From positions 22,630,001 through 22,694,000 of the forward strand of contig NW_027361827.1 of assembly GCF_039654945.1 (NCBI RefSeq): a stretch of DNA of 64,000 nt, given 5' to 3'. Within the stretch, counting starts at the first letter, position 1; every line of letters starts with the position of its first letter. Under the pieces are notes generated by a model. That model was not told where the DNA came from. It saw only the letters and a list, made by a program, of their open reading frames with translations, and did no database searches. The translations under genes and the position numbers were made by a program. Below are positions 9,744 through 64,000 of this stretch, piece by piece. Source of the DNA: Dendrobates tinctorius. Taxonomy: Eukaryota.

Positions 9744-10827
9744 CTGTAGACGGTCAGCAACCCTGATGAATGGGGGCCTTGATTAGAACGTCATCCAAAT
9801 GAGGAATAGAAATAATCCCTATGGAATCATGTATAGCGTGACCTTCATGAAGGCTCTAGGAGACAAGACTACACCAAAGGAAAGGGCCGTGAACTGATAA
9901 TGGAAGTCCTGAATAGCGAACCGGAGGATTCTTGGATGACCTAGAAAGATAGTAATGTAAAAGTAAGCATCCTGAATCTCTACAGAGCCGAGGACCTCCT
10001 CAGGTTCCATGGAGGCCATTAAACTTGAGGTCCATTAATGGAACAAACGGAGCCTTCCTTCTTTGGAACCACAAACAAGTTAGACCGGAAAAGCGTTCCT
10101 GAGCAGGAACAAGAATGATGACATCTGCTAGAGAACGAGATGCAATAGCCTTGATGAACCTGGAAGCTAGAGAGTGTTTCTTTGGTGGTTGAGACGTGAA
10201 AAATCAATTTCGAGGGAATGAAGAAAATTCGATTATGAAGCCAGAGGACCACAGAAAGCCAAATCTTGAAAAAGTAGGAGACGATTGGGAGAAGCTCCAC
10301 CTGGGGGTGCCCCGTAAAGCGGAACAGAATGTATTGGATTTGAAAGAGGGCCTTTTCTTTACTTGCCATGCAAGGCATTGTTCCTGACGTTTATGACACT
10401 CAGAAAAAAGCAAACTGACGAAAGAATTGAAAAAAATCGTAGTTACTTACCGATAGCGGTATTTCTCCGATCCCATGACGGCACCACGGAGAGAGGGGAT
10501 CCGCCCCACGGGGACTGGAAACCTACTGATAAAAAGGCGGTACCTCTCTCCCGCATCAGTTGTTTTACAGAGCATTAATGGAACTTCAGCCTAATATGAA
10601 TACAACACTTGAAAAAAAGGAATTTCTATAATTATTAAACTGCGTAGAGGAGACACCACGTGACTTTCTAACTAAACTGTATTTACAACAAGTGTGCACC
10701 CCACGCGTGTAGGGAGGGGATATACGGGTGCCGTCATGGGATAGGAGAAATACCGTTATCGGTAAGTAACTACGATTTTCTCCTTCCCCCATGACTGCAC
10801 CACGGAGAGAATTGCAGAGACTATCTA

Positions 10828-11900
10828 TTAGGGGGGGACCACTGCCTCCAGCACCCTTCTACCAATGGTTAGATCTGAGGAGGTGGCTAGGTCCAGCCGA
10901 TAGTGGTTAAAGAAAGTTGAAGGAGAGGACCAAGTAGCGGCTCTACATATCTGCTCAATGGAGACGCCTGCTCTCTCTGCCCAGGAAGTTGACACCGCTC
11001 TTGTGGAATGGTCCATTATTCTGCCTGGGATGTCCGCGCCTTCTGACGAGTACGAAAAGGTGATGGCGTCCCTTATCCACTTCGCTAGTGTGCTCTTTGA
11101 TGCCTTTCTCCCTTTCTTTGGTCCCTGGAAGCAGACAAAAATAGCCCTATCCCTCCTACACTCCCTGGTTGCCGCTAAGTATTCCACTAGGCATCTCCTG
11201 ACATCTAATGTGTGCAAGGTCTCTTCTCTCTTGTTTTTGGGATTGGGGCAAAAGGAGGGGAGGGAGATTTCCTGAGTTCGGTTGAAACGGGACGCTACCT
11301 TCGGCAGATAGGCTGGGTCTGTTCTAAGTACCACCCTGTCATCCATAATCTGTTTGAATGGAGGAAAGGCCGACAGGGCCTGGATGTCGCTATTTCTACG
11401 GGCCGATGTGAGGGCTACCAGGACGGAGGTCTTGATAGATATTAATTTCAGCTGTGCTGTCTGAAAAGGCTCAAAGGGAGGCTTGGTCAGGGCTGAGAGT
11501 ACTTAGTTTAGATCCCAGGGAGGGGTGTTTAGGGAAGACGTGGGCCTGGATCTACCGACTGCCTTAATGAACCTGGACACCCAACGATTCCCCGCCAAGT
11601 CACAGTTGTATAGGGCCCCCAGGGCTGCCACTTGAACCTTTAGTGTGCTGGTAGCTAGGCCTTGCTCTAAACCTCTTTGTAGGAACTCTAAGATGTTAGA
11701 TATGGGTACCTTCCCCTTCGGGCTAGCCTTTGATACTGAAAGGAACTTTCTCCAGACCCTCCCGTACTGTTTGGTGGTTATCGGCTTCCTGCTTCGCAGT
11801 AGCGTGGATACTAAACTTTGGGAGAAGCCTCTGTTGATTAATAGAGCCCTTTCAAATTCCAGGCCGTCATGTGTAGGTTCTCCGCCTGAGGGTGCAGTAC
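10828..11900 (-). pseudogene. DIRS-B tyrosine recombinase (ORF3), frameshifted
   Basis: PWDLN, SARR, HSTR, AATW and FFNHY motifs. Confidence 0.9.
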
Positions 11901-13740
11901 TGGGCCCTGGGAGAGTAAGTTCGGGATATCCGGGAGGACCCACAGATCGGAGATAGACATTCTCCTCAGCCACGATAACCACATCCTCCTTGGCCAAAAG
12001 GGGGCCATTAGTATTACCCTCGCTTTGTCCTCCCGAATCTTCCTCAGAACTGACAGAATTAAGGCTATTGGTGGGAACGCACATGCAAGGGGAAAGTGCC
12101 AGGGGATCATAAAGACGTCCAGAGCTAAGGGGTCCCTGGATGGGTCTATGGAGCAAAATGTTTTCACTTTCCGATTCGTATTGTTGGCGAATAGGTTTAT
12201 GTTGGGTTTTCCCCATAGTTGTGTGATCTGATTGAAAAATTTCTGGTTCAGTTCCCATTCACCCTGTCTCAGCTGTGTGCGACTTAAAAAGTCCGCCATC
12301 ACGTTGTCTGACCCTTTTATGTGTAAGGCCGTTAGTGAGCCTAGGTTCCCCTCTGCCAAGTGGAAAATTGATTTTGTCACGTCCATAAGGGTACGGGATC
12401 TCGTTCCCCCCTGATGATTTAAGTAAGCGACTACCGTGCTGTTTTCGGAGAATACTCTTACGTGGTGGCCTCTGAGGGGTTTTAGAAAAAAACAGGAGGG
12501 CGCGCTTCACCGCTAATAGCTCTTTCATATTCGAGGAGGCTGTCTTTTCGTTTTCTGTCCAGGCTCCTTGTGCTACTTGGTTGTCCCAGTGAGCACCCCA
12601 CCCCCTGGGGCTTGCGTCTGTAGTAAGGATCTGAGAGACCGGTATCACCCAAGGAACCTCCCTGGCTAGGTTGGATGGTTCCGTCCACCACTGTAGAGAG
12701 CAAACTGTTATGAGTGAGATGTTTAACTGCCCTTCTAAATTCCCGTGAAGAGAAATTTCTGCCTCTAGTATCTCCCACTGGAGATCTCTTGTATGAGCTT
12801 GGGCCCACTGGACCGCTGGTAGGCATACAGTCATTGAGCCGAGCAAGGACATGGCCTTCCTGAGTGTCATTAGTGTCCGTGTTATTGCCCCTGTTGCTAG
12901 CTGCTCTATGTGTAGCCATTTCCCTTCGGGGAGGCGGCACTCCTGCCTGATTGAGTCTACGGTTATGCACAAATATTCTTGCACTTGGCTCGGAATTAGC
13001 CGAGATTTCGGCAGGTTCAGCAGCCAACCTAGATTGGACAAAGATTCCATAGTCTGGTTCAGCTGGTTTCTGCAATGGCTCGGGGAGTTGCCCACTACTA
13101 GGAAGTCGTCCGAGAATGGGACTATTAGGGCGTCCTGTTCTCTCAAATGTGCCATAACCTCTGATATGATTTTCGTGAATACTCTTGGGGCGATGGCCAG
13201 CCCGAATGGGAGGGCTTTGAATTGGTAAGGCTTTATTTCTCCCCCTATTGTGACTGCTATTCTGAGAAACCGGCGGTAGTCCGTGTGTATAGGGACGTGA
13301 TAGTACGCGTCTTTTAAGTCGAGTACCGCCATGTAACAAGCTGGAAACAATATCTTTACCGCGGATTTTATTGTCTCCATTTTGAATGGAGGAATCACTA
13401 GATATTTGTTTAACCTTTTCAGGTTTACTATTGTACTGAACGTCCCATCTGGTTTCTTCCGCAAGAAGATAGGGGAATAGAAGCCTTCTCCTTTTTCTTG
13501 GTGGGGAACTTGCTGTAACACTGCTTTCTCCACCAGGGTCTGAATCTCCTGTTGTACTGCAACTTGCTCTACTGTCGACTGCCTCTGTGGGGTCACTACG
13601 AAAGAGGGTTTGGGTATGGTGTGGAATTTTAATTTGAGACCTGGTTTCTATAATGCTTAGTATCCAGGAACTGTCTGATATCTTTTCCCAGGCCGGAAAG
13701 AAGAGGCTCAATCTTCCCCCTACCTGGGAGACACCTTCAT
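11838..13740 (-). pseudogene. DIRS-B ORF2: RT, RNase H, methyltransferase-like domain
   Basis: LDLKDAYYH, LPFGL, FSDD (YLDD mutated), TTDAS..GWG, NLFA, AFPP. Confidence 0.92.
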
Positions 13741-15181
13741 TGGGGTTGCTTCTTGTCAGCCGGTTTCCCGAACATGAACCCCTTCCCCTTGCCTCTTCTA
13801 TCTTCCCACTTGTCCTGGGCGTTTTTAGGCGGCTTCCTCTGGATAAATTTCCTGCTCCGAAAGCGTTTGAAGGGGAAATTGGATGGGTTAGGGAAAGATT
13901 TCTTTTTATCCCCGCTTTCTCGAGTATATCATCCAGTGCAGGCCCGAAGAATTCTCCTTCACGGGATGGAGCACAACTTTATTTTTGTTTGCAGGCCTCC
14001 CGTCCAGCACTTGAGCCATAGAGCCCTTCGTGCTGCGTTCGAGAATGAGGCTGCTCTGGCTGTCAACCTGATTGAGTCCGCGGATGCGTCCGCTAGAAAT
14101 ACCGCTGCTCCTCTCATTAGCGGGACTGAGTCCAGGATTGCTGCCCTTGGCGTTTTGTTCCTTAGTTGGTCACCCAGCTGGTCCAGCCACACCATCAGGG
14201 CTCTGGCTGTGCAAGTGGCAGCTATAGCGGGTTTTAGTCCACCTCCAGCTGCCTCCCAGGCTCCTTTTAGGAATGTATCCGCTTTCTTATCCATAGGGTC
14301 TTTCAACGTTCCCATGTCCTCGAACGGCACAGAGAATTTTTTCGAGGCCTTCGCTATGGCTACGTCCACTTTCGGTGCCTTGTCCCAAAACGAACAACTT
14401 GGCTCCTCAAAGGTGTATTTTCTTTTTGGTGCTAGGAGGCCCTTTTTCTCTGGCCTTTTCCATTCCCTCTGTATAAGCGCCTGGATTTTATCATTCATGG
14501 AAAACGACCTTTTCTTCTGCTCCAATCCGCTAAACATGGCATACTGGATGGTCCTCTTAGGCCTGGTGTCTACTAGGCCCATAGTGGTTCTGATAGCTTT
14601 TATTAAGCTATCCGTCTCTTCTATAGGGAAGCAGCTGAGACCTTCCTCCTCAGACGACGAGGAGCCGGACGACAGGCTGTGTCTGATGAAGAAGAGGGAT
14701 CTCGCTAGGATCTGACTCAGCCTCCTTCCTTTTGGGTTTCTTATGCTTTTTGCTTTTCCCCTGAAGGGTTCTGACGGTGTTCTCTACCTGGTGGGCAATT
14801 AGGGCTCCAAGGTCATCCACGAACCCTGGAGATTCCTTGCATATTGTATGCTCAATGCAGGACTGGCAGAGTCTTTTTTCCCCATACCGTGGGGAGTTCC
14901 TCCTTACAAAGTGGACAAATCTTGTGGTTGGACATCTGTGTGCACTTCTTCCCCGAATCAAACGTGGGCCCCGGATCTGTACGCGGCTTGTCCTTTGGGG
15001 CTCCTGCCCCCCTGGACTCCTTGCTGCGTCGGGACGCCGAACGGCTACTGCTGCCGTGTCGTTGTGACTGCTCCTTCGTTTCCTTCTTCCGGTGCTGCTG
15101 CGGTGACTTCCGTGGTTGCTGCTGGTGTCCTGCGTCTGAAGACATGTCCAGCAGCAGCTGCTCTTCTGGCTCCGTACTCAT
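13741..15181 (-). pseudogene. DIRS-B ORF1 (gag-like, CxxC...CxxC finger), intron-less, frameshifted
   Basis: ORFs 14852..15181, 14650..14961 and 13959..14582; CPLC...CQSC; APKVDVAI. Confidence 0.88.
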
Positions 15182-16214
15182 GGCTCCAGGTGGCAGACCG
15201 CACTATGGCCTCTGTGCGCCTTTAAGCCCCGAGAAGGCAAGTTCCAAAAGGGAAACATTTTTTTTACCCCCTGTATGCGCGCCCTGGTTTGCGACGCCCC
15301 GCCCCCCAGCGTGTGCGCACCACCGTCACTCCCAGTGGTGCCCTGCGCAGACGGCGGCGCCTCCTCCTGCCCTCAGGCGCGTGAGTGTCGCCGCCCCGCC
15401 CATGCGCACCACCGCCGGCACTCCCAGAGGTGCATTGCGCGGTCGGTGGCGTCTCCTCCTGCCGCCCCCTCCCGCGCGTGTGCACCCCCGCCGGCCTTCC
15501 CAGAGGTGCCTTGCGCGGGCGGCGGAGTTCCCGGCCTGACGGCCTCTTCCGCCCTGCGCGAGCACCCCCGCCAGCGGTGTCCTGTGCGGTGGCAGCATCT
15601 CCCCTGGCTGCTGGTGCGCATGGGGATACCTGCGCCCGCTGGCGCACTCCCACCCCGGTACCTGCCCAGGGCCTGCTTCCGGCCGCCATGGAAGGACGCC
15701 ATCCCGAGGGAGGACGGATCTTCCTGCTGCCGTCTCTCCCTCTCGCACAGCCTGGAGGCCCGCTGACTCCAGCGGTGGCGCCTCGGCAACCGCCCCAGCT
15801 GGGACAGGGGGCTCCTGCTGCCATCCACCAGACTGGTCGGCCCCGGCATCCGGTAAGTCTGTAGGTTCCCTTGTGGGGACAGGAAACCAACTGATGCGGG
15901 AGAGAGGTACCGCCTTTTTATCGGTAGGTTTCCTGTCCCCGTGGGGAGGATCTCCCCTCCCTCCGTGGTGCCATCATGGGGAAGGAGAAAATGGGGTATA
16001 TCGTCTGGGCATTTGCTGGTGGAGAGAGGTGATCTTTACACCCGTAGCATCAGAAGTTATCATATCTAGCTTAGTCCTAAAAAGGCATAGGCCCTGAAAG
16101 AAAAGACTGGTGAGGGACTTTTTAGAAGCAGAATCCTCATTCCTCACTTTTAGCCATAGGATCCTATGAATGGCCATGATGTTGCTGGATACTATTGTTC
16201 AACAACTGGCAGCA

Positions 16215-25568: not shown

Positions 25569-26640
25569 TCAGGCCAGTGGACTCACCACCGCTGCCTGCA
25601 GAATCCTTCTACCTAGGCTGGCGTCCGCCGAAGCGTAGGTGTTGACCCTGTAGAATTTCACAAACGTGTGAACCGAAGACCAGGTTGCAGCTTTGCAAAG
25701 CTGCAGCGCGGAGGCTCTGTGGCGTACCGCCCAGGAAGCACCCACTGCCCGGGTAGAGTGCGCTCTGATCCCAGGATGGGCCACTCGATGCTTAACCCGG
25801 TAGGCCTCCAAAATTGCCGATCTGATCCAGCGAGCAATAGTAGCTTTGGAAGCTGGGTGACCTTTCCGCGCCCCATCTGGAATGACGTAAAGAGAGTCTG
25901 TCTTTCGCAAGGAAGACGTCCTAGACAGAGACTCTCATCGCCCTGACCAGATCCAGCTTGTTCAGAGACCGCTCCCGAGGGTGAGTTGGACTCGGACAGA
26001 AGGACGGCAGAACAATATCCTCATTGAGGTGAAAGGAGGACACCACCTTCGGAAGAAAAGAGGGCGGAGGCCGCAGAACTACCTTGTCCTGGTGAAGTAC
26101 CAGGAAAGGATAGCGGCAAGAAAGAGCCGCCAATTCCGACACGCGCCGGATGGAGGTGATGGCCACCAGAAAAGCTACCTTCCAGGAGAGAAGGGCAAGG
26201 GAGACTTCTCTGAGAGGTTCAAAGGGAGAACCTTGCAGAACCTCAAGAACCAGATTAAGGTCCAATAGATCCACGGGCGCTCGATACGGAGGAGCCGTGT
26301 GGGCCATGCCCTGAAGAAAGGTTCTGACCTGAGGGCAGGAGGCCAAAGTCTTCTGAAATAAAATGGACAGCGCCGAAACTTGACCCTTCAAGGAACTGAG
26401 AGCAACCCCGCATCCAGCCCTGCCTGAAGAAACGCCAGAACGGAAGGGAGCGAAAAGCACATAGGCGCGATGTTATTGGCCTCACACCAAGTGAAATAGG
26501 CCTTCCAAGTACGGTAGTAAATTTTGGAAGATGATGGCTTCCTGGCTCGGATCATGGTATGAATTACTTGACCGGAGAATTCTGCTCGTTTCAAAACCTC
26601 GGTCTCAACAGCCACGCCGTTAAATTGAGCGGCCGAGAAT
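25569..26640 (-). pseudogene. DIRS-C tyrosine recombinase, frameshifted
   Basis: SIRRVSEL, AHSTRAV, AATW and FVKFY motifs. Confidence 0.9.
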
Positions 26641-28300
26641 TGGGGTGGCAAATCGGACCTTGAGACAGCAGATCTGCCCTGTCCGGAAGCTTCCAGGGGG
26701 CGTCCACGAGAAGGTTGACAATGTCCGCGAACCAAGACCTTCTGGGCCAATTCGGGGCGATGAGAATGACTGGAATTCCTTCTGCTTTGATCTTCAACAG
26801 CTTGGGAAGAAGAGGCAGGGGAGGAAACAGGTAGGGGAGCTTGAACTGTGACCAAGGAATGGCCAGAGCGTCGGCGCCCACTGCGAGAGGATCTCGAGTT
26901 CTGGATACAAACTGTGGGACCTTCCTGTTGAGGCGAGAAGCTAGCAGATCTACGTCCGGGGTTCCCCAACGACTGCAGAGCTGAAGAAATACCTCCGGAT
27001 GTAGGGACCACTCTCCTGCCGCGAGACCCTCGCGGCTGAGAAAGTCGGCGGCCCAGTTGTCTACGCCGGGAATGTGTACCGTGGAGATTGTCGGTACCGA
27101 AATCTCTGCCCACTGAAGGATCTTGGACACTTCTGCCAGGGCTGAGACACTCCGTGTCCCTCCTTGGCGGTTGACATATGCCACCGCTGTGGCACTGTGT
27201 CTGAATCCGGACAGGCAGGCCCCTGAGGAGCCTCTCCCAGTGGACGAGAGCCAGATGGATTGCTCGTATCTCTAGGACGTTGATCGGCAGAGCAGATTCT
27301 TGAGTCGACCAACGACCCTGAACAGTGTGATTGCGGAACACTGCACCCCAGCCGAGGAGGCTGGCATCCGTTGTTACAATCTGCCAGTGAACAGGAAGAA
27401 AAGACCGCCCCAAGAGGATGAGAGGTGACGTCAACCACCAGTTGAGTGACCGCTTGATCCGGCATGAAAGACGAACAGAGCGATCCAGGGACAGAGCCGA
27501 CCTGTTCCACCTCGACAGAATGGCGTGTTGGAGAGGTCTGGCGTGAAATTGGGCAAAGGGAACTGCGTCTATCGCCGCCACCATCTTTCCCAGGACCCTC
27601 ATAGCTGTTCGGAGGGACGGAAATCGTGTGGTCTGCAGCGATCGTACAGCCTGCTGCAGGGAGAGAATCTTCTCTTGTGGGAGAAAGACCCTTGATCGAC
27701 GAGTGTCGAACAGTAGGCCCAGAAACACAAGACGTTGACTAGGGACCAGACAGGACTTTTTCCTGTTGACGATCCACCCGAAATCGGAGAGAGTGTCCAG
27801 GATGATCGTCAAACTTAGGCATGCCTGTTGGAAAGAGGGAGCTTTGATCAGAATATCGTCGAGGTACGGAAAAAGAACGAGACCTCTGATCCTCAACAAG
27901 GCCATCAACGCAGCCATGATCTTTGTGAAGACTCTGGGAGCGGTGGCGAGACCGAAGGGCAGCGCGACAAACTGGTAATGTTCCTGGCGAACCGCAAAAC
28001 GCAGGAACTTCTGATGTCCGGAGAATATGGGAACATGTTGATAGGCATCTTGGATGTCTATCGAACACATGAATTCCTGCTCCTCCATGGAAGCGATTAC
28101 CGAACGAACCGACTCCATGCGGAAGTGACGAAGACGAACTCTCTTGTTGAGCAGCTTGAGATCCAAGATGGGTCGGACCGCCCCGTCTTTTTTCGGCACG
28201 ACAAACAGGTTTGAATAAAACCCTGTAAACCGCTCCGATTCTGGAACGGGCACAATCACCCCGGAACTGAGGAGAGAGTCGATGGCCGTAAAGAACCCCG
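26591..28300 (-). pseudogene. DIRS-C ORF2: RT, RNase H, MT-like; one frameshift near 27190
   Basis: IDIQDAY, LPFGL, YLDD, TTDAS, VDLLAS, YLFPP. Confidence 0.92.
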
Positions 28301-29768
28301 GATCTGGATGGTCTGCCCTGCGAAGAGTGGGAGCGCCAGGAGGGAGTGGGTCTGAAGGAAACGTTCTTCCTATCTTGGCGTGCCTGCGGTCTTTGTTGGT
28401 TGGAGGAGGTCTCCGCCGTATTGAAACGGCGGTAAGCCCAAAAGGGTCGAAACTGACGCCTCAGTGGGGGTCTGCGAGGCTTGGACTGAGGCAGGAGAGA
28501 ACTCGTGCCTCCGGTGGCATCCTTAATAATTTGGTCCAATTGGGATCCAAAGAGGCGCCCTCCCTGAAAAGGCAGATTAGTAAGAGACTTTTTAGATGAC
28601 GACAGGTCCGCCTGCCAGGCCTTGAGCCAAATTGTACGTCGGACTGCCACAACGTTACTTGACGCCTGAACTGCGCAGGATGCGGCATCCAAAGAAGCAG
28701 AAAGCAGATAATCCCCTGCATGGGAAATCTGATTGGCAAGATCGGCCAATCGATCTGGTTGTGCTTTCTCTAGGATGCTCTGACGAAGATCCTCTGCCCA
28801 AGTGGCTATGGCTTTTGCTGCCCAAGATGAAGCAAAAATTGGGCATACCGCCGTCAAAGCCGCTTCGAAGGCAGACTTCGCTAGGGATTCTATGATCCTA
28901 TCATTAGAATCCTTAAGAGACGCCACGCCTGAAAGCGGGAGAACCATGTTATTAGAAAGCCTGGACACGGGCGGATCGACTGAGGGAGAGGCAGACCAGT
29001 TGTCCGTGAGCTCTTTAGCAAACGGGTACAGAACGCCGAGACGCTTCCCTCGTTGAAAGCGTATGGTCGGATCCCCTCTTTACCTGGTAAAAATCTTTAC
29101 AAACTCGGAATGTAAAAGGAATACCCTGGAGGGTGTTTCTTCCCGTCTGAACGAAACCTCCTGATCTGAGGATTTCGCAGGAGGGTCAGCAATGTCGAAG
29201 GTCTGATGGATCACTGCAATGAGGTTCTGCACAGTAACCCTCATGTTCGCATCCTGGTCCGAATCCAGCTCTAAGATCCCCTCAGATGACCTGTCCGAGA
29301 GCGCTTCACCTGACTCGGGACAGGAGGCCCGGGAGGGAGGCTGCCGAGAAGGACTATGTGGTGACATGGGGTGAGGAGAGGATTCCGGCTGGAGATCCTG
29401 CCTGGGTCTTTTGCGACTAACGCTGGCCGACTCAGATGGAACCTCTTGAGGCCTGCTGGACCCTGTAGAGGTGTCCAGGGGCAACTTATTCAGGACGGCT
29501 ACTAGGGACTGAGACACCCTGGTGAGGTCTGCCACTGACTGTGATAGAGACGAGGCCCAGCCAGGCATGGGGGGGGGGGTTCACTCTCGCCTGGGGCCCT
29601 AGATGGCTCCTGGGCGGCGTCAGGTTGAATAGGATTGCTACAGTCCAGGCAGAGGGAAGTGGACTGACCTGAGGGAAGTTTGCGATTGCAAGAAGAGCAT
29701 GCAAAAAACTTGACGAGAGTGCAGGAGGGGGCCGCAGGGCGGTTACGGTCAGATTTGGAGTTAGACAT
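28300..29768 (-). pseudogene. DIRS-C ORF1 (gag-like with CSSC...CLDC finger)
   Basis: ORFs 29502..29768, 29080..29568 and the first half of 27739..28968. Confidence 0.88.
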
Positions 29769-29776
29769 AGTGAAAC

Positions 29777-29849
29777 CTGAGGTAGTGCCGAAAGGTTGGG
29801 GGACAGGGTGCAGAGAAGGGTGTCAGCCTGCAGATGCAGAGCTACTCAC
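29777..29849 (-). other. Putative 73-nt intron in the DIRS-C leader, ending 8 nt before the ORF1 ATG
   Basis: GTGAGT...gCTGAC...pyrimidine tract...CAG|gtttcactATG. Confidence 0.65.
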
Positions 29850-31345
29850 GATCCGGTGACCCCAGAGAAGAAGGTAGCCACCTCTCTGCAGCTGCAGGTC
29901 AGAGCGATATCCAGCTGACAGGCCCAGGGAGCGATATCCGGCTGACAGGGGCGTCCGGCTGTGCGGCTGCAAGATGGCGACCGTCTGAGAGGAATCAGGG
30001 AAAAACGCGCTCCCAGGGGAAGGAGGGCGGAGCTAACCGCCTGCTGAATCCGGCACCGCCCCTGGCCAGGAACAGGCTGAGAAGAGCGGTGGGAGGGCCT
30101 GGAAAGGGCGGGAGAGAAGCCCGCTTAGTAGAACTGTGCGGGGGGCTTGGCCGCGATACAGGAGTAGGCCCGAACTGAAGCCGGGGCCTAAATTAATGGC
30201 GGCGGCCGCGCGGAGGATCCGCAACATGAGTGCTGCCGGGAAAAGACCCCTGTCCGGAATAGGGACAGCGGCTGACCACAAAAAAAGGCTGCCTGGAGGC
30301 GCGGGACGGCCACGGAGACCCGCAGTGCTAAGGGAATCTCTCCTGACCAAGTCCAGAGACGAGTGGGGATCTAATACTCACCCTGTCCCGGGCCCGAACC
30401 CTGAAAATAAAGGTACCTTCTGATTGAAGCTTGTCTGCGTCTCATCCGACCGACAGGCTCTGGCAGGCGAGTGGGTGGGAGACGGACGACCAGCACTCTC
30501 AGAAAAGCCGACACGTATACATGTTGGCGTCCGCACGGAAGGCTGCTGGTCCTGGTGCAGAGAGCTGCGAGGATACGGGGCGGCAGTACGCGCCGTACTC
30601 GCAGCCTCTTCGTGGGACTACAGAGGTGACTATTCACCCTGTATCCCTCCGGAGAAACCTGAAAAGGAACGACGCACATCGAGGTAGATATGGGTCTAAT
30701 GAAAGACCCGTGTCCACCTCTTACTGACACTAAGCTAAACCGAGGAATTCCCTGCCGGTCGGTGGGGTGTACACTGCGGAGGAGGAGCTAACCTTTTTTG
30801 GGCATAGTGTCAGCCTCCTAGTGGCAGCAGCATACACCCCATGGTCTCTGTGTCCCCCAATAAGGCGAACGAGAAAGATCTAAATTCTGGCTTCACATAA
30901 TTGCTAGAGCCCATATCAAGGTTTCATTGCATACACACTACCAAAGAAGTAATAAATACAGCTTCATTTGATTTGACACATGCAATATTACCTATAGCCA
31001 CTATTATCAAACATACTAATAAAGTATGGGCAGCACAGCATTTTTCTGTACCAGTCCAAGCTCCAACAGATAATATAATCTAGAAAAAAAAGCAGGAGCA
31101 AAATATGGAATAATACAGCAGCATTAAAGGCTCACTTAGTGAAATGTTTTATTTGCCCATTTATCAGGAATCATGTGTGTAAGTGTAATGATGCCAGTAA
31201 TATACCCACCGGTTGCAGTCTTGTGGGGTCAGCAGTGTTCAGATATCATGTGACTGCATGTGTGACCCACCAGATCAAACAGTGGTTGTTGTGTGGAGCG
31301 GAGGGGTTACTTTTTTTTTAACTTTTCTTAATAAAAGTCTATTAA

Positions 31346-51660: not shown

Positions 51661-54600
51661 TTAACATCTCAATTCAATCGACATTAGTAGCTTAATTACG
51701 TTCTTTACCTTTTAGAGGGCAAACAGACCCTCTTACATACCTAAAATAACTGCAGACATCTTACTTATACAACGTCAAGTTTAGTAGTGCACTGCGCAAG
51801 GCTGAATTAGATTGAGAAATGGAATAAACTCCAATTGTTGTGGTTTGGAAGGATTAATACAATAAAAATGGAGCTTCCGCCTCGCCTTCTATACTTATTT
51901 CAGACAATTCCTCTTTGCCAACCTGCCTCCTTTTTTTCATGACTAAGGTCACCATAACTAAATTCATCTGGTCACAAATGCCCCGTTTATCTTACAACCT
52001 ACTGAGCAGTCTGAAAAAAAAAAAAAAAAAAGCAGTATGTTTCTCAGAGCCTTCACTGGGGAACACACGAACCATGGGTGTATGCTGCTGCCACTATGCA
52101 CAAAAAAGTTAGCTCCTCCTCTGCAGTATACACCCCACCGACTGGCCCTAGGTTAATCAGTTAGTGAGAAAGCAGTAGGAGAAGCAACGAAATAGAGAAA
52201 CAAAATAGACAACTCAAAACTTTAACAATATAACACACTAAAAAGAGCTGATAAACATGGGAAGGTGCTGTGTCCCCCAATGAAGGCTCTGAGAAACAAA
52301 TTTTACAGTAAGCAACCAAAAATCCTGATTTCTCTATCGCTTCATTGGGGGAATCATGAGACGTCCCAAAGCAGTCCCTGGGGAGGGAACAACAGAAACT
52401 CCATTCAGGACGGAGAACTCACCACTGCCAACTGCAAGATCCTCCTACCTAAGCTGGAGTCCGGCACAGCATAGGTATGGACCCTGTAAAATGTGGTGAA
52501 CGTGTGAATGGAAGGAAAAGGTTGCCGTTTTGCAAAGTTGCAGGGCGGATGCCTTATGGTGTACTGCCCAGGAGGTGCCCACTGCCCGGGTAGAGTAAGC
52601 CTTAAAACCAGGGGGAGGTACTTTGTTCTTGACCTGGCATGTTTCCAATATTGCCATTATGATCCAGTGAGCAATCGTAGCTTTGGAGTCTGGGAGGCCT
52701 CTTTGCGCACCCTCTGGAATGACAAAAAGAGTCCGTCTTCCTAAAGGGGGCGGTCCTAGCCAGATAGACCCGCACCGCCCTGACCAGTTCTAACCTGTTC
52801 AGTGAACGTTCCAGAGGATTAATCAGAGCAGGACAAAAGGAAGGGAGGACAATGACCCCATTTAGGTGAAAGGCGGACACCACCTTGGGAAGAAGGTGGA
52901 AGAGGCCGCAAAGCCACCTTGTCCTGGTGAAGAACCAAGAAAGGAGGGCGACATGTAAGAGCCACCAATTCCTTGATGCGCCTAATGGAGGTGAGGACTA
53001 CAAAAAACGCCACCTTCCAAGACAGAAAGGACAGACAGACCTCTCAGAGGTTCAAAGGGAGAACTCCTAAGGGCCTCCAGAACTAGATTGAGGTCCCAGG
53101 GGCCCACAGGTGTCCGGTACAGAGGAGCCGCATGCACTACCCCTTGAAAAGTTCTGACCTGAGAACGCGAAGCTAAATTTTTCTGGAAACGAACAGAAAG
53201 TGCTGACACCTGGCCGTTTAGCTAACCAAGAGCAGCGTCAAGTCTCGCCTGGAGAAACGCCAAAATGGAAGGGAGAGAAAAGGACATAGGCGCGATGTGA
53301 TTATAGACTCATACCAGCTGAAATAGGCTTTCCAAGTCTGATAATAGACCACGGAAGATGACGGCTTCCTAGCTTGGATCATGGTGTTGATCACCCGATT
53401 TGAAAACCAGGAGGCTCTCAGAACCACAGTTTCAACAGCCACGCTGTTAAATTGAGAGACCGAGAATTCTGGTGGCAGATCAGTCCTTGGGACAAAAGAT
53501 CCGGACTGTCTGGGAGCCTCCAGGGGGCGTCCGCAAGAAGATTGATGATCTATGCGAATCAAGACCAGAATGACGGGCACCCCTTCCGCCTTGATCTTCT
53601 TCCACAGCCTTGGAGGGGGAGGGAGGAAACACATAGGGAAGGGCAAGTGACCAGGGTATTGCCAGAGCGTCAGTGCCCACGCGAGAGGATAGCGGGACCT
53701 GGAAACGAACCGTGGAACCTTCCTGTTCAGTCAGCACACCATGAGGGCCACATATGGAGTTCCCCATTAAAGGCAAATCTGATGGAAGACTTCCTGATGC
53801 AGGGACCACTCTCCCGCCACGAGACCCTCGCAGCTGAGAAAGTTGGCGGCCCAATTGTTCGTGCTGGGGATACGTACTGCAGAAATCTCCAGAACCGTCA
53901 CCTCTGCCCAGAGGAAAACCTTGGATACCTCGGCCATCACCAAGGGGCTCCGAGTCCCTCCCTGGTGAGCGACATATGCCACCGCCGTGGCATTGTCCGT
54001 CTGAACTCGGATTGGCAGACCCCTGAGAAGCCTTTCCCAGCAACGGAGGGACAGAAGAATAGCCCTTACCTCAAGGATGTTGATCGGCCGAGAGGATTCC
54101 TCTGCCGACCAACGTCCCTGGACAGTCAGGTGACAAAAGACCACACCCCAGCCTAGAAGGCTGGCGTCCGTCGTCACCACCTGCCAGTGAACAGGAAGAA
54201 AGGACCGACCCTGGAATATGAGAGGGGATGACATATCAAATGAGAGGTCGCTTGACTCGGGAAGAGAGCCGAATGGGGCTATCCAGAGAGAGAGAACAGA
54301 CATGCTCCACTGAGATAGGATGGCCTGCTGAAGTGGTCTTGAATGGAATTGCGCAAAAGTAATCGCTCTCAATGCTGCCACCATCCTTCCCAGGACCATC
54401 ATGGCTGAGCAGAAAGATGGAAGCCAAGGGCGGTGCAGAGAGCAAACCCCTTGCTGGAAGATGGCGCTCTTCTCTTTGGGAAGAAAAACCCTTGTCTGGT
54501 GGGTGTTGAACAGCATGCCTAGAAAAATGAGGCACTGATTCGGAACAAGACAAGACTTTGCCATCTGAAACAGGACAGAGTTTCGAGAACGATGGTCAGA

Positions 54601-56012
54601 GACTTTCCTTGGCCTGAGAAAAAGATGGAGCCTTGATAAGAATGTTGTCAAGATACGGGATGAGCACTAGACCTCTGATCTGCAGAATGGCCAATAACAC
54701 TGCTATGATTTTTGTGAAAACCCCAAGAGCAATTGCGAGACCGAACGGCAGGGAGACAAACTGAAAATGGTCCTGCTGCACCGCAAAACACAGAAATTAT
54801 GAAGATAGGGAAATGGAGATAGGCATCCTGGATGTATACGGAGCACAGAACTTCTGCGCCTCCATGGAAGCAATTATTGAACTAAGAAGCTCCATCCTGA
54901 AATGTCGCAGTCGGACCCTTTTGTTCACTTACTTTAGATCCAGGATGGGTAAAACCACGCCGTTCTTTTTCGGCACCACAAATAGGTTCGAATAAAATCC
55001 TGTGAAACGTTCCCGGTCTGGGATGGTAACAATGACACCTGAACTGAGAAGAGAGGCAAAGGACGCAAAGAAACCCAGAACTAGAGAAGCATCTCTTGGA
55101 AGACAGGATTCGAAGAATCAATCTCGGGGCCGCAAAACGAAGTCTATTTTGTATTTCGGATGATAATCTGGTTCGAGAGGTCAGCCAATTTCTCTGGTCG
55201 AGCTCCAGCAAGAATGAACTGACTGAGCTGTATAGCCCATGCAGCTATGGTCTTTGAAACCCAGGTAGAGGCAAAGGTCGGGCACAATGTACAAGCGGCC
55301 ACTTCAAAGGGAGACTTTGCGAAAGATTCTATGATCTTGTTATTGGAGTTTTTGAGGGATACTCCATTTGTTAGCGGGAGAACCGTGTTGATGGACAGTC
55401 GGGAAACTGGAGGGTCCACAGTTCGAGAAGCGGTCCAGTTCGCAGTGAGCTCAGGGATACAGGATGCCGAGGCGCTTTCCTCTTTGGAAATCTGGTCGGG
55501 ATCTCCCTTTCCCTGACAAGTACCTCCTCAAATTCTCTATGTGCGGCAAAGGCCTTGGGAGCTGGCTTCGACCGTCTAAACGAAACAGCCTGTTCTACGG
55601 GTTCCGTAGAGGTATCCTTAATGTTAATGGTCTGGTTGACCGACACAATGAGGCTCTGGACTATGCCTTTCATATCAGAGGCCTAATCAGCATCCAGGTA
55701 CGAGTCATCCAAAACTTCCTCCTCGACTGCCGGGAGAGACCGGGGGGGGGTGGTTGGGAGAGAGATGGAGCGGGAAGAGGTCCTGGAACGAACGAGAGGT
55801 CCTGGAACGAACGACGCAACTGCCGGGACCTCTTGCGGCCTAAGTTGGTAGGCACAGCCGGCGAGTCCTGCGACCCACTAGTAACAGGGGAGGCCGGAAG
55901 GGGCAACTTGTCAAGAACGGACACCAGGATCTGCGATACCTTGGTGAGGTCTGCCACTGACTGTGACAGAGAGGAAACCCACACTGGGATAAGGGCACCG
56001 CTCTCCTGGAGC

Positions 56013-58202: not shown

Positions 58203-59081
58203 AATGTATTTTGCCGCAAAAAATAAGCATCCCATGCATTCCTATGGGATTCCGCAATGCTGTGCCAATGCTGCGGTTTTTACCACGGCGGAATCGCTTT
58301 GCGGTAAAAAATGCAGCATGCTCATTAATTTTGCGGAATCGCGGCGATCTCGCACCCATAGGAATGCATTGTTCTGCTTACTTTCCGCATGTGGATGTGC
58401 ACACCATGTGAAAAGTAAACAGAACATTTGCGGATGGTACCCACGGTCCGGAGGAGAGGAGACTGTCCTCCAGGCTTTGGGTACCATATCCCTGTAAAAA
58501 ATAGAATTTAAAATAAAAAATATTGCTATTCTCACCTTCCGACGTCCCGTGCAGCCTTCCCGCCTCTCTCCACGCTCCCGATCCCAGTAAGCCTTTGCGA
58601 GCGATGACGTCCATTCTCGCGGGATCGCGAAGTCTCACGGTCATCGCGAATGACCGCGAGACGTCGCGATCCCACGAGAACAGACGTCATCGCGGTAATT
58701 GTCGCAAAGGATTACTGGGACCGGGACCGTGGAGAGAGGCGGGAAGGCTGCGTGGGACGTCGGAAGGTGAGAATAACTATTTTTTTTATTATTATTTTTT
58801 ACATTCTATCTTTTACTATTGATGCCACATAGGCGGCCTCAATAGTAAAATGTTGGTCACATTCGTCAAACACTATGTTTGACAAGTGTGACCAACCTGT
58901 CAATCAGTTCTCCAAGTGATGCTCTAGATCGCTTGGAAAACGCTAGCAATTCTGCAAGCTAATTACACTTGCAAAATGCTAGTTTTTCAGCGGGAAAATC
59001 GTGCAAATTTAAAATGCGATTTTCCCGCGGAATGGAATTCTGGAATTCTCGCGGTAATTTCCGCTACGTGTGAACCCAGCC
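58203..59081. mobile_element. Harbinger-like MITE (left end lost) with central palindrome at 58520-58780
   Basis: Ends cgtgtgaacccagcc|tta. Confidence 0.7.
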
Positions 59082-59430
59082 TTAACGGTATTTCTGAGCC
59101 CACGACGGCACCATGGAGAGAGGGGATCTGCCTCACGGGGACAGGAAACCTACAGATAAAAAGGCGGTACCTCTCTCCCGCATCAGTTGTTTTACAGAGT
59201 ATTAACGGAACAACTTTAAGAAAAAGGAAATTTCTATAATCATTAAACTGCGTAAAGGAGACACCACGTGACTTTCTGACTAAACTGTATTTACAATAAG
59301 TGCGCACCCCACGCGTGTAGGGAGGGAATATACGGGTGCCGTCATGGGTTCAGAGAAATACCGTTAACGGTAAGTAACTACAATTTTCTCTTTCCCCCAT
59401 GACGGCACCACGGAGAGAATTGCAGAGACT

Positions 59431-60480
59431 ATTAGGGGGGACCACTGCCTCCAGCATCCTTCTACCAAAGGTTAGATCTGAGGAGGTGGCTAGGTCCAGC
59501 TGATAGTGGTTGGAAAAGGTTGAAGGAGAGGACCAAGTGGTGGCTCTACATATCTGCTCAATGGAGACGCCTGCTCTCTCTGCCCAGGAAGTTGACACCG
59601 CTCTTGTAGAATGGGCTGTTATTCTGTCTGGGACATCCGCCCCCTGCGACGAGTACGACAAGGTGATGGTGTCTCTTATCCACCTTGCCAGCGTGCCCTT
59701 CGATGCCTTTCGCCCCTTTCTTGGTCCCTGGAAGCAGACAAAAAGAGACCTATCCTTTCTACACTCCCTGGTGGCCGCTAGGTACTCAATTAGGCATCTT
59801 CTCACATCTAATGTGTGTAACACTTCTTCCCCCCGGTTTTTGGGATTGGGGCAAAAGGAGGGGAGGGAGATTTCCTGAGTTCTGTGGAATCGGGATGCTA
59901 CCTTCGGCAGGTAGGCTGGGTCTGTTCTAAGTACCACCCTGTCCTCTAGGATCTGTGTAAACGGAGGGAAGGCTGACAGGGCCTGGATATCACTGATTCT
60001 ACGGGCCGATGTCAGGGCTATCAGAAGGGAGGTCTTGAGTGATATCAGTTTTAGTGGGGCCTCTTGTAACAGTTCAAAGGGAGGTTTTGACAGGACTGAG
60101 AGGACTAAGTTTACATCCCAGGGAGGAGTGTTTAGGGAAGGCATAGGTCTGGATCTACCGGCTGCCTTAATGAACCTGGCCACCCAACGGTTCCCTGCCA
60201 AGTCATAGTTGTAAAGGGCTCCTAAGGCCGCCACCTGAACTTTCAATGTGCTAGTAGCTAACCCTTGCTCTAAGCCCTTCTGCAAGAACTCCAAGATCCC
60301 CCTGCCCTGGTGTTTGATACCGAGAGGAACTTCCTCCAGATCCTCCCGTACAGTTTAGTGGTTACCGGTTTCCTACTCTGTAAGAGAGTGGACACAATTT
60401 TTGGAGAAGCCTCTGCTGCTCAACAGAGCCCTTTCAAATTCCAGGCCGTCATATGTAGGTTCTCCATCCGAGGGTGCAGT
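59431..60480 (-). pseudogene. DIRS-F tyrosine recombinase; catalytic domain uninterrupted
   Basis: ORF 59350..60294 is colinear with the YR of copy B. Confidence 0.9.
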
Positions 60481-63400
60481 ACAGGGCCCTGGGAGAATAA
60501 GTTCAGGATATCCGGGAGAACCCAAGGGTCGGAGATGGACATTCTCCTCAACCACGAGAACCACGTCCTTCTCGGCCAGAAGGGGCTATTAATATTACCC
60601 TTGCTTTGTCCTCCCGAATCTTCCTCAGAACTGATGGAATTAAGGCTATTGGTGGAAACGGATAAGCAAGGGGGAAGTGCCAGGGGATCATGAGGGCATC
60701 CAGGGCTACCGGGTTCCCGGAGGGGTCTATGGAGCAGAATGTTTTCACCTTCCGGTTTGTCCTGTTGGCGAATAGATCTATGTTGGGTTTCCCCCATAGC
60801 TTCGTGATCTGAGTAAAAATTTCCTGATTCAACTCCCACTCCCCGTCTTAGCTGTGTGCGACTGTGCCATCACATTGTCTGCCCCTTTTATGTGTAGTGC
60901 GGTCAGTGAGCTAAGATTTTCTTCTGCGAACTGGAAAATTGATTTTGCCACTTCCCTTAGGGCACGGGATCTTGTACCCCCCTAATGGTTCAAGTAAGCA
61001 ACTACTGTGTGGTGGGACCTGAGGGAGCCCAGAAAACACAGGAGGGCGAGTTTTACCGCTAAGAGCTCCTTCATGTTTGAGGAGGCTGCTTCTTCGTCCT
61101 CCGCCAGACTCCTTGTGCTACCTGGTTGTCTAAGTGAGCCCCCCACCCCCTGGGGCTTGCATCTGTGGTAAGGACTCGAGATATTGGTAATACCCAAGGC
61201 ACCCCCCCCCCGAGATAGGGTGGATGGCTCCGTCCACCACTGCAGTGGGAGAGCCGTTTCGGGTGAGATGTCTAACCGCCCTTCTAAATCTCCGGGAAGA
61301 GAAACCTCTGCGGCCAGTATCTCCCACTGGAAATTCCTTGTGTGGGCTTGGGCCCACTGCCCAGCCAGGATGCAGGCTGTCATTGAGCCAAGCAGGGACA
61401 TGGCCTTCCTCAGAGTTGTTGCTGTGTAAGTTTTTGCCCGTCACTATCTGTTTCATGTCTATCACTTTCCCTTCTGGGAGACGGCACTCTTGTCTGAGCG
61501 AGTCTTTGGTAATGCCCAGGTACTCTTGTACTTGGCTCGGGACCATCCGAGATTTTGGCAGATTTAGCAGCCAACCTAGGCTGGTCAGTGCCTCCATAGT
61601 CCTGTTCAGCTGATCCCTGCAGTGAGAAGGGGAGTTGCCCATCACTAGAAAGTCATCCAAGTATGGTACTATAAGTACGTCCTGTTCCCTTAAATGTGCC
61701 ATGACTTCCGCTATGATTTTTGTGAAGACTCTCTGAGCGATGGCCAGCCTGAATGGGAGAGCCTTGAATTGGTAGTGCCTTATCTCCCCCCTTATAGTGA
61801 CTGCTATCCTAAGATACTGGCGGTAGTCCATGTGTATTGGGACGTGATAGTACGCATCTTTTAGATTGAGTACTGTCATGTAACAGGCTGGAAACAGCAT
61901 TTTTACTGCAGATTTTATTGTTTCCATTTTGAATGGATGGATTATCAGGCACTTGTTTAACCTTTTCAGGTTTATTATAGTCCTGAATGTCCCGTCTGGC
62001 TTCCTTCTTAGGAAGATAGTGGAATAGAAGCCTTCTCCTTTTTCCCGGTGGGGGACCTCTTGTAGCACTGATTTCTCCACCAGGGTCTGAATCTCTTGTT
62101 GGACTGCGTCTTGCTCTTCCACTGACCGTCTCTGCGGGGGTCACTACAAAAGAGGGTTTGGGTGAGGTGTGGAAATTTAATTTGAAGCCTGTTTTTACCA
62201 CATTTAAGATCCAGGAACTGTTTAATATCTTTTCCCAGGTGGGGAAGAAGTGGCCCAATCTTCCTCCTACCTGGGAGACACCTTCATTGGGGTTGTTTCT
62301 TGTCCGCTGGTTTCCCGAACATGAACCCTTTCCCTTTTCCTCTCCTGTCCTCCCACTTATCCTGGGTGTTTTTAGGCGGCTTTCTCTGGATAAATTTCCT
62401 GCTCCAAAACAGTTTGAAGGGAAAATTGGACTGGTTGGGGAAAGACTTCTTTTTATCCCCTGCTTTGTCAAGGATATCGTCCAATGTGGGGCCGAAAATG
62501 AATTCGCCTTCACAGGGGATGGAACAAAGATTGGATTTCGTCTGCAGGTCCCCCGTCCAGCATTTGAGCCAAAGTGCTCACCATGCCGCATTCAAAAATG
62601 AAGCTGCCCTGGCTGTCAGTCGGATTGAATCCGGGGATGCATCCGCCAGAAAAGCCGCCGCTCCTCTCATCAATGGGACGGAGTCTAAAATCACGCCTCT
62701 TGGGGTTTTGTTCTTCAATTGGTCCTCCAACTGATCTAACCACACCATCAAGGCTCTCGCTGTGTGGCAGCTATGGCGGATTTCAGTCCTCCTCCGGCTG
62801 CCTCCCAGGAACCTTTTAGGAATGTTTCTGATTTTGTTGTCCATGGGATCTTTTAATGTTCCCATATCCTCAAACAGCAGAGCGAATTTATTTGAGGCTT
62901 TTTCTATGGCTACATCTACCTTTCTCCCAATATGAGCAGCTTGGGTCTTCAAAGGGATATTTCCTTTTTGGGGCCAGGAGGCCCTTTTTTTTCGGCCTTT
63001 TCCATTCTCTCTGAATTAGTGCTTGGATTTTCTCGTTCATGGGGAATGATCTTTTTTTTTGTTCCAACCCGCTGAACATGGGGTCCTGGATAGTTCTTTT
63101 GGGTCTGGTGTCTACCAGCCCCATAGTGGTTCTAACTGCTTTTACTAAATTATCCGTTTCCTCAATAGGGAAACAGCTGCGACCCCCCCCCTCTTTAGAG
63201 GACGAAGTGTCGGATGCTGAACTGTCTGAGTTTGATGTTGAAGGTTCCCTCTACCCATCGCTGAGGTCTGATTCAGGGTCCCTGGTCTTAGCCTTGCTAT
63301 GCTTTTTGCTTCCTCCCTGGAGGGTTTTAACGGTGTTTTCTACCTGGTGTTTGATTAGGGCCCTAAGGTCGGGGGCGAACCTCGGAGATTCCTTACAAAT

Positions 63401-63508
63401 CGTGTGATCAATGCACGCTTGGCAGAGCCTTCTCCCCCACCCCGTGGGAAGCTCCTCTTTACAAAGTGGGCAAATCTTGTAGTTGGCCTTCTGCGTGCAC
63501 TTCTTCCC

Positions 63509-63589
63509 CTAAAAGAGAAGGCGGATAGGCCCTAGTTACAGCTTGTACATTCACGTAGTCCACTTACCCACCAGGCCGAAGAAGGATAC
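63509..63589 (-). other. Putative 81-nt spliceosomal intron in DIRS-F ORF1
   Basis: CCG|GTATCCTT...ccttctcttttAG|GGG; contains an in-frame TGA; precisely absent from copy B. Confidence 0.8.
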
Positions 63590-64000
63590 CGGATCTGGAG
63601 GGACCACCGGGTCTGCCGAAGCCTTGTCTTTTGGGGCCACTGCCCCACTGTACTCTTTGCTGCGACGGGATCCAGAGCGGCTGCTGCGTCGCTGTGGCTG
63701 GTCCTTGGTATCCTTCTTACGGCGTTGCTGCTGGTGCGGTGATTGCCGCGGCTGCCGCTGGTGTCGTGTGTCGGAGGACATATCCAGCTGCGGTTGCTCT
63801 TCTGGAGGCTCACTCATGCTCCCAGGAGATGCAGACATCTTTTGCCTGGTGATTTCTTTAAATATCGCTGCTCCCCTTCCGGCCACTGCCGCTTGGGGGA
63901 GCGTTCCCTGGGTGCACACCGCCCCTGCCTCCCCTACCCGGCACTCCGGGCTCCCAGGGATGCATTGCGCCGCACCCGGCGCCGACGTCATTCGGTCCCA

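What the first reader, a model, noticed from the sequence alone, without database searches (positions are those of the whole stretch)
63509..63589. A DIRS retrotransposon with an intron in ORF1, and a full-length sister copy that has lost it precisely
Seen: copy F reads PKDKASADPVVPPDP, then an 81-nt segment GTATCCTT...ccttctcttttAG containing an in-frame TGA, then GKKCTQ. Copy B reads PKDKPRTDPGPTFDS|GKKCTQ, with the junction at 14954/14953. The two align codon for codon only if exactly the GT-AG segment is removed. B keeps both ITRs and the ICR. Inference: ORF1 needs splicing to be translated through its Zn finger, and a spliced full-length RNA was reverse-transcribed and integrated in B or its lineage. 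Retroelements normally purge introns, so coexisting forms suggest regulated splicing, for example splicing gating Gag production while unspliced RNA serves as genome. The donor GTATCCTT also matches the U12-type consensus, but no TCCTTAAC branch site is present and a U2-type GGTAAGT lies 22 nt downstream. I do not know whether this has been described for vertebrate DIRS.
Basis: partly seen in the sequence, partly recalled or inferred. Interest (0 to 1): 0.85.

Follow-up and report, generated by a model that had tools for sequence, protein, structure and literature searches.

The report
Conserved spliceosomal intron in frog DIRS gag
A frog DIRS retrotransposon carries a small, genuine, evolutionarily conserved intron inside its gag gene, and a neighbouring sister copy has lost exactly that intron; this is unusual, because retroelements normally shed their introns.

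Summary
Copy F (minus strand) has an 81-nt GT..AG segment, 63589 to 63509. It is exactly absent from sister copy B at 14954/14953. It is the largest indel between the two copies.

The segment is a real, old intron:
- Thirteen related DIRS copies in four other frog species (Ranitomeya imitator, R. variabilis, Dendrobates tinctorius, Engystomops pustulosus) carry a phase-0 GT..AG intron of 74-102 nt at or within a few codons of this site, just before the gag zinc finger.
- Every intron tested has in-frame stops. Only the upstream donor yields full-length Gag.
- Exon 1 is under purifying selection, dN/dS 0.28.

B and F are sisters nested among intron-bearing families, so B is a derived, precise loss. 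Reverse transcription of spliced RNA explains it best.

The U12 idea fails: the U12-like donor is not conserved.

New here is an invariant strong donor-like GGTRAGT 19-34 nt inside every intron. One R. imitator gene model uses it and gives a frameshifted product.

Splicing was not shown in RNA of this genome. Contigs of four runs showed no junction.

First readers of this scan left 26 similar, unchecked notes elsewhere in this genome. I found no paper describing it.

The parts
59083..64000 (-). DIRS copy F (gag, RT, middle ORF, tyrosine recombinase). It is cut by the window end at its 5' side and is decayed.
   Evidence: Self-BLAST against B gives 80% identity over 4.5 kb. Pfam finds RVT_1 and a weak Phage_integrase hit. 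tblastn map.
63590..63817 (-). F gag exon 1: 76 codons from the ATG homologous to B's start, basic and disordered.
   Evidence: Translation. dN/dS against B is 0.28, with dS 0.74.
63509..63589 (-). 81-nt phase-0 GT..AG intron in gag. Retaining it gives an in-frame TGA at 63553-63551.
   Evidence: Homologous introns in 13 copies from four other frog species.
63581..63592 (-). Weak upstream donor CCG|GTATCCTTC. It is the only donor that keeps Gag in frame.
   Evidence: It matches 5 of 9 positions of the U1 consensus. The pattern (C/A)CG|GTA is conserved in all copies.
63547..63569 (-). Invariant internal donor-like GGGTAAGT (the GT at 63567-63566), followed by the conserved CGTGAATGT.
   Evidence: GGTRAGT lies at +19 to +34 in all 12 introns scored (7 of 9 positions to the consensus), and at +19 in the D. 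tinctorius copy. Gene model P0029 uses it as its donor.
63509..63541 (-). Branch-point-like CTGTAAC (A near 63536, 27 nt from the 3' splice site), a pyrimidine tract and TAG|G.
   Evidence: Read directly from the sequence. Homologues have the same layout.
63254..63508 (-). Start of F gag exon 2: GKK, then a CxxC...CxxC zinc finger. It is stopped by a TAG inside an 11-nt insertion near 63257.
   Evidence: Weak treble-clef zinc-finger hit.
10433..15990 (-). DIRS copy B. Its termini are complete (ITRs and ICR), its ORFs are decayed, and it lacks the intron.
   Evidence: Pfam finds LAP2alpha (gag) and RVT_1.
14951..14956 (-). B's exon-exon-like junction TCG|GGG (14954/14953), exactly where the intron lies in F.

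Best explanation
The 81-nt segment is a genuine U2-type spliceosomal intron. It is an ancestral, conserved part of the gag gene in a clade of frog DIRS retrotransposons.

Proposed mechanism, with its basis:
- The element's primary transcript has two fates.
- Unspliced, it is the template for reverse transcription, so the intron is inherited by new copies. This is inferred from the intron's persistence across families and species.
- Spliced from the weak upstream donor (CCG|GTA) to the acceptor, it is the only RNA from which full-length Gag can be translated (N-terminal basic region, zinc finger, LAP2alpha-like domain). The reading frames show this directly.
- An invariant strong donor-like site about 20-30 nt inside the intron either competes with the weak donor or recruits U1. 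Using it gives a frameshifted, truncated product. Its role is unexplained.
- Copy B descends from a rare event in which the productively spliced RNA was reverse-transcribed and integrated. That event removed the intron exactly.
For: 1. The 81-nt GT..AG indel is exact. It is the largest indel between B and F.
2. A homologous phase-0 intron of 74-102 nt lies before the zinc-finger exon, at or within a few codons of this site, in:
- six distinct NCBI gene models of R. variabilis and R. imitator;
- one further R. variabilis model and one Engystomops model;
- two loci of an independent R. imitator assembly;
- unannotated copies in R. variabilis and D. tinctorius.
All are full DIRS elements with gag, RT and recombinase in order.
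3. Of the nine introns aligned, 4 have lengths that are not multiples of 3, and all contain in-frame stops. Retention or use of the internal donor ends the ORF early. Only the upstream donor gives Gag.
4. Exon 1 is coding in the frame that continues into exon 2: dN/dS 0.28 in exon 1 and 0.11 in exon 2.
5. In the gag+RT tree, B and F are sisters (support 1.0), nested among intron-bearing families.
6. DNA contigs of the source species show:
- intron-bearing copies with a B-like exon 1 end;
- similar k-mer depth over intron and exons;
- small indels not divisible by 3, confined to the pyrimidine tract.
7. Identical gag proteins are encoded at 3 loci (P0005) and at 2 loci (P0001), all with the intron. 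Intron-bearing elements therefore transposed recently.
Against: - No RNA evidence from this genome. Laying contigs of four runs at 90% likeness or more gave no 63590/63508 joint. The run kinds (RNA or DNA) were only guessed, and the contigs are about 100 nt long.
- The gene models may rest on frame-keeping prediction and not on RNA reads. I could not see their evidence.
- The productive donor is weak (4-6 of 9 positions) and sits beside a stronger one. The strong donor may therefore dominate in vivo.
- Only one intronless copy (B) was seen. Its loss could in principle be a genomic deletion.
Confidence: 0.82

Rival explanations
1. B lost the 81 nt through an ordinary genomic deletion, for example a microhomology-mediated one at the flanking G's. 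Its ends coincide with the intron ends by chance, and no spliced RNA was involved.
For: The boundaries are flanked by 1-2 nt of G microhomology. Only one intronless copy was seen. B carries other small indels.
Against: The deletion matches to the base the only donor-acceptor pair that keeps Gag in frame in 9 of 9 tested homologues. It is 2.5 times longer than any other B/F indel. A retroelement passes through RNA in every generation, so a spliced template is the simplest source.
Confidence: 0.08
2. The segment is real and conserved, but the productive splice is rare or absent in vivo. The strong internal GGTRAGT is the donor actually used, or the segment acts mainly as a U1-binding or RNA element. 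Full-length Gag is then not the main product.
For: The internal site is invariant and stronger (7 of 9 positions against 4-6 of 9). One R. imitator gene model uses it. No productive junction appeared in the contigs.
Against: Use of the internal donor shifts the frame by different amounts (19-34 nt, inconsistent modulo 3). It ends the ORF after 2-58 codons. Yet the zinc finger and LAP2alpha-like gag body stay conserved and open in young multi-copy elements. B's junction records use of the upstream donor.
Confidence: 0.08
3. It is a U12-type (minor spliceosome) intron, as F's GTATCCTT donor suggests.
For: F matches the U12 5' splice-site core at 8 of 8 positions.
Against: Homologous introns match only 4-6 of 8 positions (GTACCT, GTATCT, GTATTT, GTAAAG). 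No TCCTTAAC-like branch site lies 10-20 nt from the 3' splice site. All have long pyrimidine tracts and a branch-like motif about 27 nt upstream, as U2-type introns do.
Confidence: 0.02

Closest known systems
Penelope-like elements that keep introns through retrotransposition (Arkhipova et al. 2003, as cited in PMC8557442)
   Same: A retroelement whose genomic copies retain a spliceosomal intron over many rounds of transposition. The intron lies near the 5' end.
   Different: PLEs use target-primed reverse transcription, and their intron retention is ascribed to that mechanism. Here the element is a tyrosine-recombinase DIRS, and the intron splits the gag coding sequence. PMC8557442 calls PLEs 'highly unusual among retroelements' in this respect and names no DIRS case.
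Retroviruses and LTR retrotransposons with spliced subgenomic mRNAs and unspliced genomic RNA. Examples: Cer1 (PMC10309623) and BARE (PMC3735527), both seen; copia and Ogre from my own recollection.
   Same: Two RNA pools come from one transcript. Unspliced RNA is copied and spliced RNA is translated.
   Different: In those elements Gag is normally made from the unspliced RNA, and splicing gives env, a gag-only RNA or pol. Here the arrangement is reversed: the unspliced RNA cannot encode Gag at all.
Processed (intronless) retrocopies made from spliced mRNA
   Same: B shows exact removal of an intron at its splice junction.
   Different: B is a copy of the retroelement itself, with its own ITRs and ICR. 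It is not a host mRNA copied in trans.
Exaptation of DIRS gag as the LAP2alpha-specific exon of TMPO and of ZNF451 (PMC4495291)
   Same: It is the same gag domain, Pfam LAP2alpha. [quoted passage not shown]
   Different: They did not identify such an acceptor. Here a native, conserved acceptor is seen directly upstream of the gag body in living DIRS families. Whether the mammalian exon began at this acceptor was not tested.

Membership tests
DIRS1-like tyrosine-recombinase retrotransposon | Reverse transcriptase ORF | tested here: met
   Pfam RVT_1: E 3e-16 in B and 6e-15 in F.
DIRS1-like tyrosine-recombinase retrotransposon | Tyrosine recombinase in place of a DDE integrase | tested here: inconclusive
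   The Phage_integrase hit is below the Pfam cut-off (E 0.007). The ORF is 57-80% identical to the last ORF of the Ranitomeya elements. Catalytic residues were not checked.
DIRS1-like tyrosine-recombinase retrotransposon | Inverted terminal repeats plus an internal complementary region | tested here: met
   In B: ITR arms 10491-10566 / 15884-15959 (92% complementary) and ICR 10433-10485 / 10727-10779 (96%). In F the 5' end lies beyond the window.
DIRS1-like tyrosine-recombinase retrotransposon | gag with a LAP2alpha-like domain (vertebrate DIRS) | tested here: met
   PF11560, E 1.8e-8. This agrees with PMC9210276 and PMC4495291.
U2-type spliceosomal intron | GT..AG ends, a pyrimidine tract and a branch-like motif 20-40 nt upstream of the 3' splice site | tested here: met
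U2-type spliceosomal intron | Position and phase conserved among homologues, while length and sequence drift and stop codons occur | tested here: met
   Thirteen homologous copies carry it. It is phase 0 in every gene model solved. Lengths are 74-102 nt. Four of the nine aligned introns are not multiples of 3, and all nine contain stops.
U2-type spliceosomal intron | Removal seen in RNA | tested here: inconclusive
   No joint appeared in the contigs of four runs, and their RNA status is uncertain. Two independent annotations of Ranitomeya genomes splice it out, but the evidence behind them is not visible. B's junction is indirect evidence.
U12-type intron | Conserved RTATCCTT donor | tested here: not met
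   It matches 8 of 8 positions only in F and 4-6 of 8 in homologues.
U12-type intron | TCCTTAAC branch site 10-20 nt from the 3' splice site | tested here: not met
   It is absent from F and from the homologues.
Intron loss through reverse transcription of spliced RNA | Exact junction, and the intronless state derived on the tree | tested here: met
   Junction at 14954/14953. B and F are sisters inside intron-bearing clades. Copies with a B-like exon 1 end joined to the intron exist in DNA contigs.

The most novel reading that the evidence does not exclude
The intron, and above all its invariant U1-type site, is kept because it makes the element look like a host gene. It would protect transcribed DIRS copies from HUSH-like surveillance. 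[quoted passage not shown]

On this reading, intronless copies such as B are silenced or dead-end, which would explain why they are rare. The same native acceptor would be what allowed DIRS gag to be captured as terminal exons of host genes (LAP2alpha, ZNF451).
Probability: 0.15. Interest if true: 0.9.

Novelty: new variant of a known kind. Interest (0 to 1): 0.7.

Why it matters
Retroelements pass through RNA in every generation, so they are expected to lose introns. Specialists single out Penelope-like elements as the odd exception (PMC8557442).

Here a second, unrelated order, DIRS, keeps a short intron inside gag. It is retained across at least four frog genera besides the source genome. 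Its architecture is conserved: a weak productive donor, an invariant strong decoy donor, and an acceptor directly in front of the zinc finger. This has four consequences.

1. DIRS replication must select unspliced RNA as its template, while Gag can only come from spliced RNA. That is the reverse of the retroviral arrangement.
2. A splice choice can set Gag dosage.
3. It supplies the native splice acceptor that Abascal et al. (PMC4495291) inferred for the capture of DIRS gag by TMPO and ZNF451.
4. It offers a natural test of the idea that introns shield mobile elements from silencing aimed at intronless DNA.

On the practical side, DIRS gag ORFs in frog genomes will be mis-called as broken unless this intron is modelled. 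The two DIRS surveys I read (PMC3266345, PMC9210276) do not mention introns at all.

Tried and rejected
Searches that found nothing:
- The HMMER search of 1.84 billion representative proteins with B's 109-aa N-terminal ORF gave 0 hits.
- The word search with the same ORF also gave 0 hits. The N-terminal exon is too short and of too low complexity, and the source genome's proteins are not in those libraries.
- A search with residues 1-130 of P0001 returned only NCBI proteins. It found no transcript-derived (Logan) protein that spans the junction.

Reads:
- Four runs were laid at 90% likeness or more, all held as contigs of about 100 nt.
- They gave no 63590/63508 joint and no joint at the internal donor.
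- This is no evidence against splicing, because the run kinds were guessed and unitigs drop rare forms.
- The one intronless junction seen as a loose end is identical to B itself, so it gives no copy number.

Ideas rejected or left open:
- U12-type reading: rejected.
- F-specific insertion: rejected, because all homologues carry the intron.
- A second intron difference between B and F: none found. No other indel exceeds 32 nt.
- A 5' UTR intron in the B/F family: the 5' UTRs are too divergent to test.

Literature: eight full-text searches and several papers read turned up no description of a DIRS gag intron. Goodwin & Poulter 2001 and Poulter & Goodwin 2005 are not in the library and could not be checked.

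Full report
**1. The observation**

On the minus strand, copy F reads ...PKDKASADPVVPPDP. It is followed by an 81-nt segment from 63589 to 63509, which begins GTATCCTT and ends CTCTTTTAG. Then comes GKKCTQKANYKICPLC....

Read in frame, the segment has a TGA at 63553-63551. Copy B reads ...PKDKPRTDPGPTFDS|GKKCTQ, with the junction at 14954/14953.

A pairwise alignment places a single clean 81-column gap there. Over the whole 4.9 kb shared by the two copies it is the largest indel; the next largest is 32 nt. The gap can slide by one base either way because of flanking G's, and one placement is GT..AG.

**2. What the two copies are**

- Both are DIRS elements. The gag C-terminal part hits Pfam LAP2alpha, and both have RVT_1. 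The last ORF has a weak Phage_integrase hit.
- B has ITRs and an ICR and spans 10433-15990.
- F is cut by the window end.
- They are about 80% identical and both are decayed. B is frameshifted about 70 nt after the junction. F has an 11-nt insertion with a TAG near 63257.
- The window holds at least three more DIRS copies, all on the minus strand.

**3. Relatives elsewhere**

B's N-terminal ORF found nothing in two protein libraries. A stop-free 274-aa stretch of B's gag found 26 proteins.

- The best hits, at 72-73% identity, are NCBI gene models of the poison frogs Ranitomeya imitator and R. variabilis.
- Next come Dendrobates tinctorius, Anomaloglossus, Engystomops, Dendropsophus and Bufo. 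Xenopus is a distant hit.
- The source genome is therefore a frog, probably a hyloid close to dendrobatids. This is an inference.

I fetched the DNA of these genes and solved the exon structure by brute force against the protein.

- All eight distinct gene models have one phase-0 GT..AG intron of 74-102 nt. It lies directly before the G[KR]K...CxxC zinc-finger exon, the same site as in F. In the Engystomops model the junction sits five residues further upstream.
- The flanks show that every locus is a complete DIRS, with gag, RT, middle ORF and recombinase in order.
- P0005 is encoded identically at three loci and P0001 at two, each with the intron. Intron-bearing elements therefore transposed recently.
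- The intron is also present where nobody annotated it: in a second, reversed copy in L004 and upstream of a truncated gene model in D. tinctorius.
- It is present in two loci of an independent R. imitator assembly.
- Logan contigs of an unidentified species keep a longer GT..AG intron, of about 190 nt, just before the zinc-finger exon.

**4. Why it is an intron and not coding or junk**

- Of the nine introns aligned, four have lengths that are not multiples of three.
- All nine carry in-frame stops, the first after 2-25 codons.
- All nine have a pyrimidine tract, YAG, and a branch-like motif about 27 nt upstream.
- Only removal from the first GT to the AG gives full-length Gag. Retention, or use of the internal donor, ends the ORF early in all nine.
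- Exon 1 evolves as coding sequence in the frame that runs on into exon 2. Between B and F, dN/dS is 0.28 (dS 0.74) in exon 1 and 0.11 in the first 24 codons of exon 2.

**5. Direction of change**

A tree of the gag C-terminal part plus RT puts B and F together with support 1.0. The pair is nested among intron-bearing Ranitomeya families. Engystomops and window family C branch further out. B's state is therefore a loss.

Contigs of a DNA run of the source species support this in three ways.

- They include copies whose exon 1 end is B-like but is followed by the intron.
- K-mer depth over the intron is similar to depth over the exons.
- Small indels not divisible by three cluster in the pyrimidine tract.

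The loss coincides to the base with the only frame-keeping splice pair. Reverse transcription of a productively spliced element RNA explains this best. An ordinary deletion cannot be excluded, but it is unlikely.

**6. The donor problem**

The productive donor is weak: (C/A)CG|GTA, then Y in most copies, matching 4-6 of 9 positions of the U1 consensus.

Inside every intron, 19-34 nt downstream, lies an invariant GGTRAGT that matches 7 of 9 positions. In the nearer families CGTGAAWGT follows it. This is the most conserved part of the whole region, more conserved than the end of exon 1.

In the older R. imitator assembly, one gene model (P0027) splices from the upstream donor. Another (P0029) splices from the internal one and reads ...PQPVFMGPGGGEEKRR, then a stop. 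That is exactly the frameshifted product expected.

I cannot tell whether the internal site competes with the weak donor, helps it by recruiting U1, or serves another purpose. The U12 reading fails: F's perfect GTATCCTT is not conserved, and there is no U12 branch site.

**7. What is not shown**

I found no RNA junction in this genome. All four runs laid were held as contigs of about 100 nt, and their kind was only guessed. The evidence behind the gene models is not visible to me. So splicing in vivo, and the idea that unspliced RNA is the replicated form, remain inferences from conservation and from B.

**8. Comparison with what is known**

- PMC8557442 calls Penelope-like elements 'highly unusual among retroelements' for retaining introns.
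- The DIRS overview (PMC3266345) and the Xenopus DIRS study (PMC9210276) do not contain the words intron or splic-. Eight full-text searches found no description of a DIRS gag intron.
- Retroviruses and some LTR elements use spliced and unspliced RNA pools (PMC10309623, PMC3735527). There, however, Gag comes from the unspliced RNA.
[quoted passage not shown] The acceptor seen here is a candidate for it.
[quoted passage not shown] This suggests a speculative selective reason for keeping the intron and its U1 site.

**9. Earlier notes of this scan**

First readers left 26 notes on DIRS gag introns elsewhere in this genome. One describes tandem donors and one describes a presence/absence difference. 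None was shown as followed up. I treated them as leads only.

**10. Limits I kept**

Broken frames were read only as they stand, or in pieces. N runs were left alone, and no human sequence was used.

Noticed in passing
window 29777-29849 (minus strand): The second DIRS family (copy C) has a 73-nt GTGAGT...CAG intron in its 5' UTR. It ends 10 nt before the gag ATG, which opens straight into the zinc finger. Relative to the zinc-finger exon this is the same place as the F intron, so it may be the homologous intron with a non-coding exon 1.
   Followed up: partly
window 3-1301, 10433-15990, 25587-29900, 52496-55054, 59083-64000: At least five DIRS copies from two or more families lie within 64 kb, all on the minus strand. 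This is a DIRS-rich region with a striking orientation bias.
   Followed up: no
L015, L016 and proteins P0003, P0018, P0027-P0031: Several frog gene models are chimeras of host exons (ORC5, a UBC core, KRAB and others) spliced to DIRS gag exons. Either DIRS splice sites are used in host transcripts or they mislead annotation.
   Followed up: partly
window 63511-63546: Contigs of two runs (X1, X6) carry a variant copy in which 34 nt of the 3' half of the intron are replaced by GT. The intron therefore varies in length among copies in this species.
   Followed up: no
window 15303-15528: B's 5' UTR holds three degenerate direct repeats of about 58 nt, spaced 76-92 nt apart.
   Followed up: no
window 58494-58816: A stretch of about 320 nt matches its own reverse complement at 81%. 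This long palindrome lies just beyond the 3' end of F.
   Followed up: no
L011-L013 (Logan contigs of three runs, species unknown): A more distant DIRS family keeps an intron of about 190 nt (GTAAGA...GGCAG) between a short coding exon 1 (MDSVAAACGTGTGTSKAQ) and the zinc-finger exon. The called protein P0019 starts inside the intron.
   Followed up: partly
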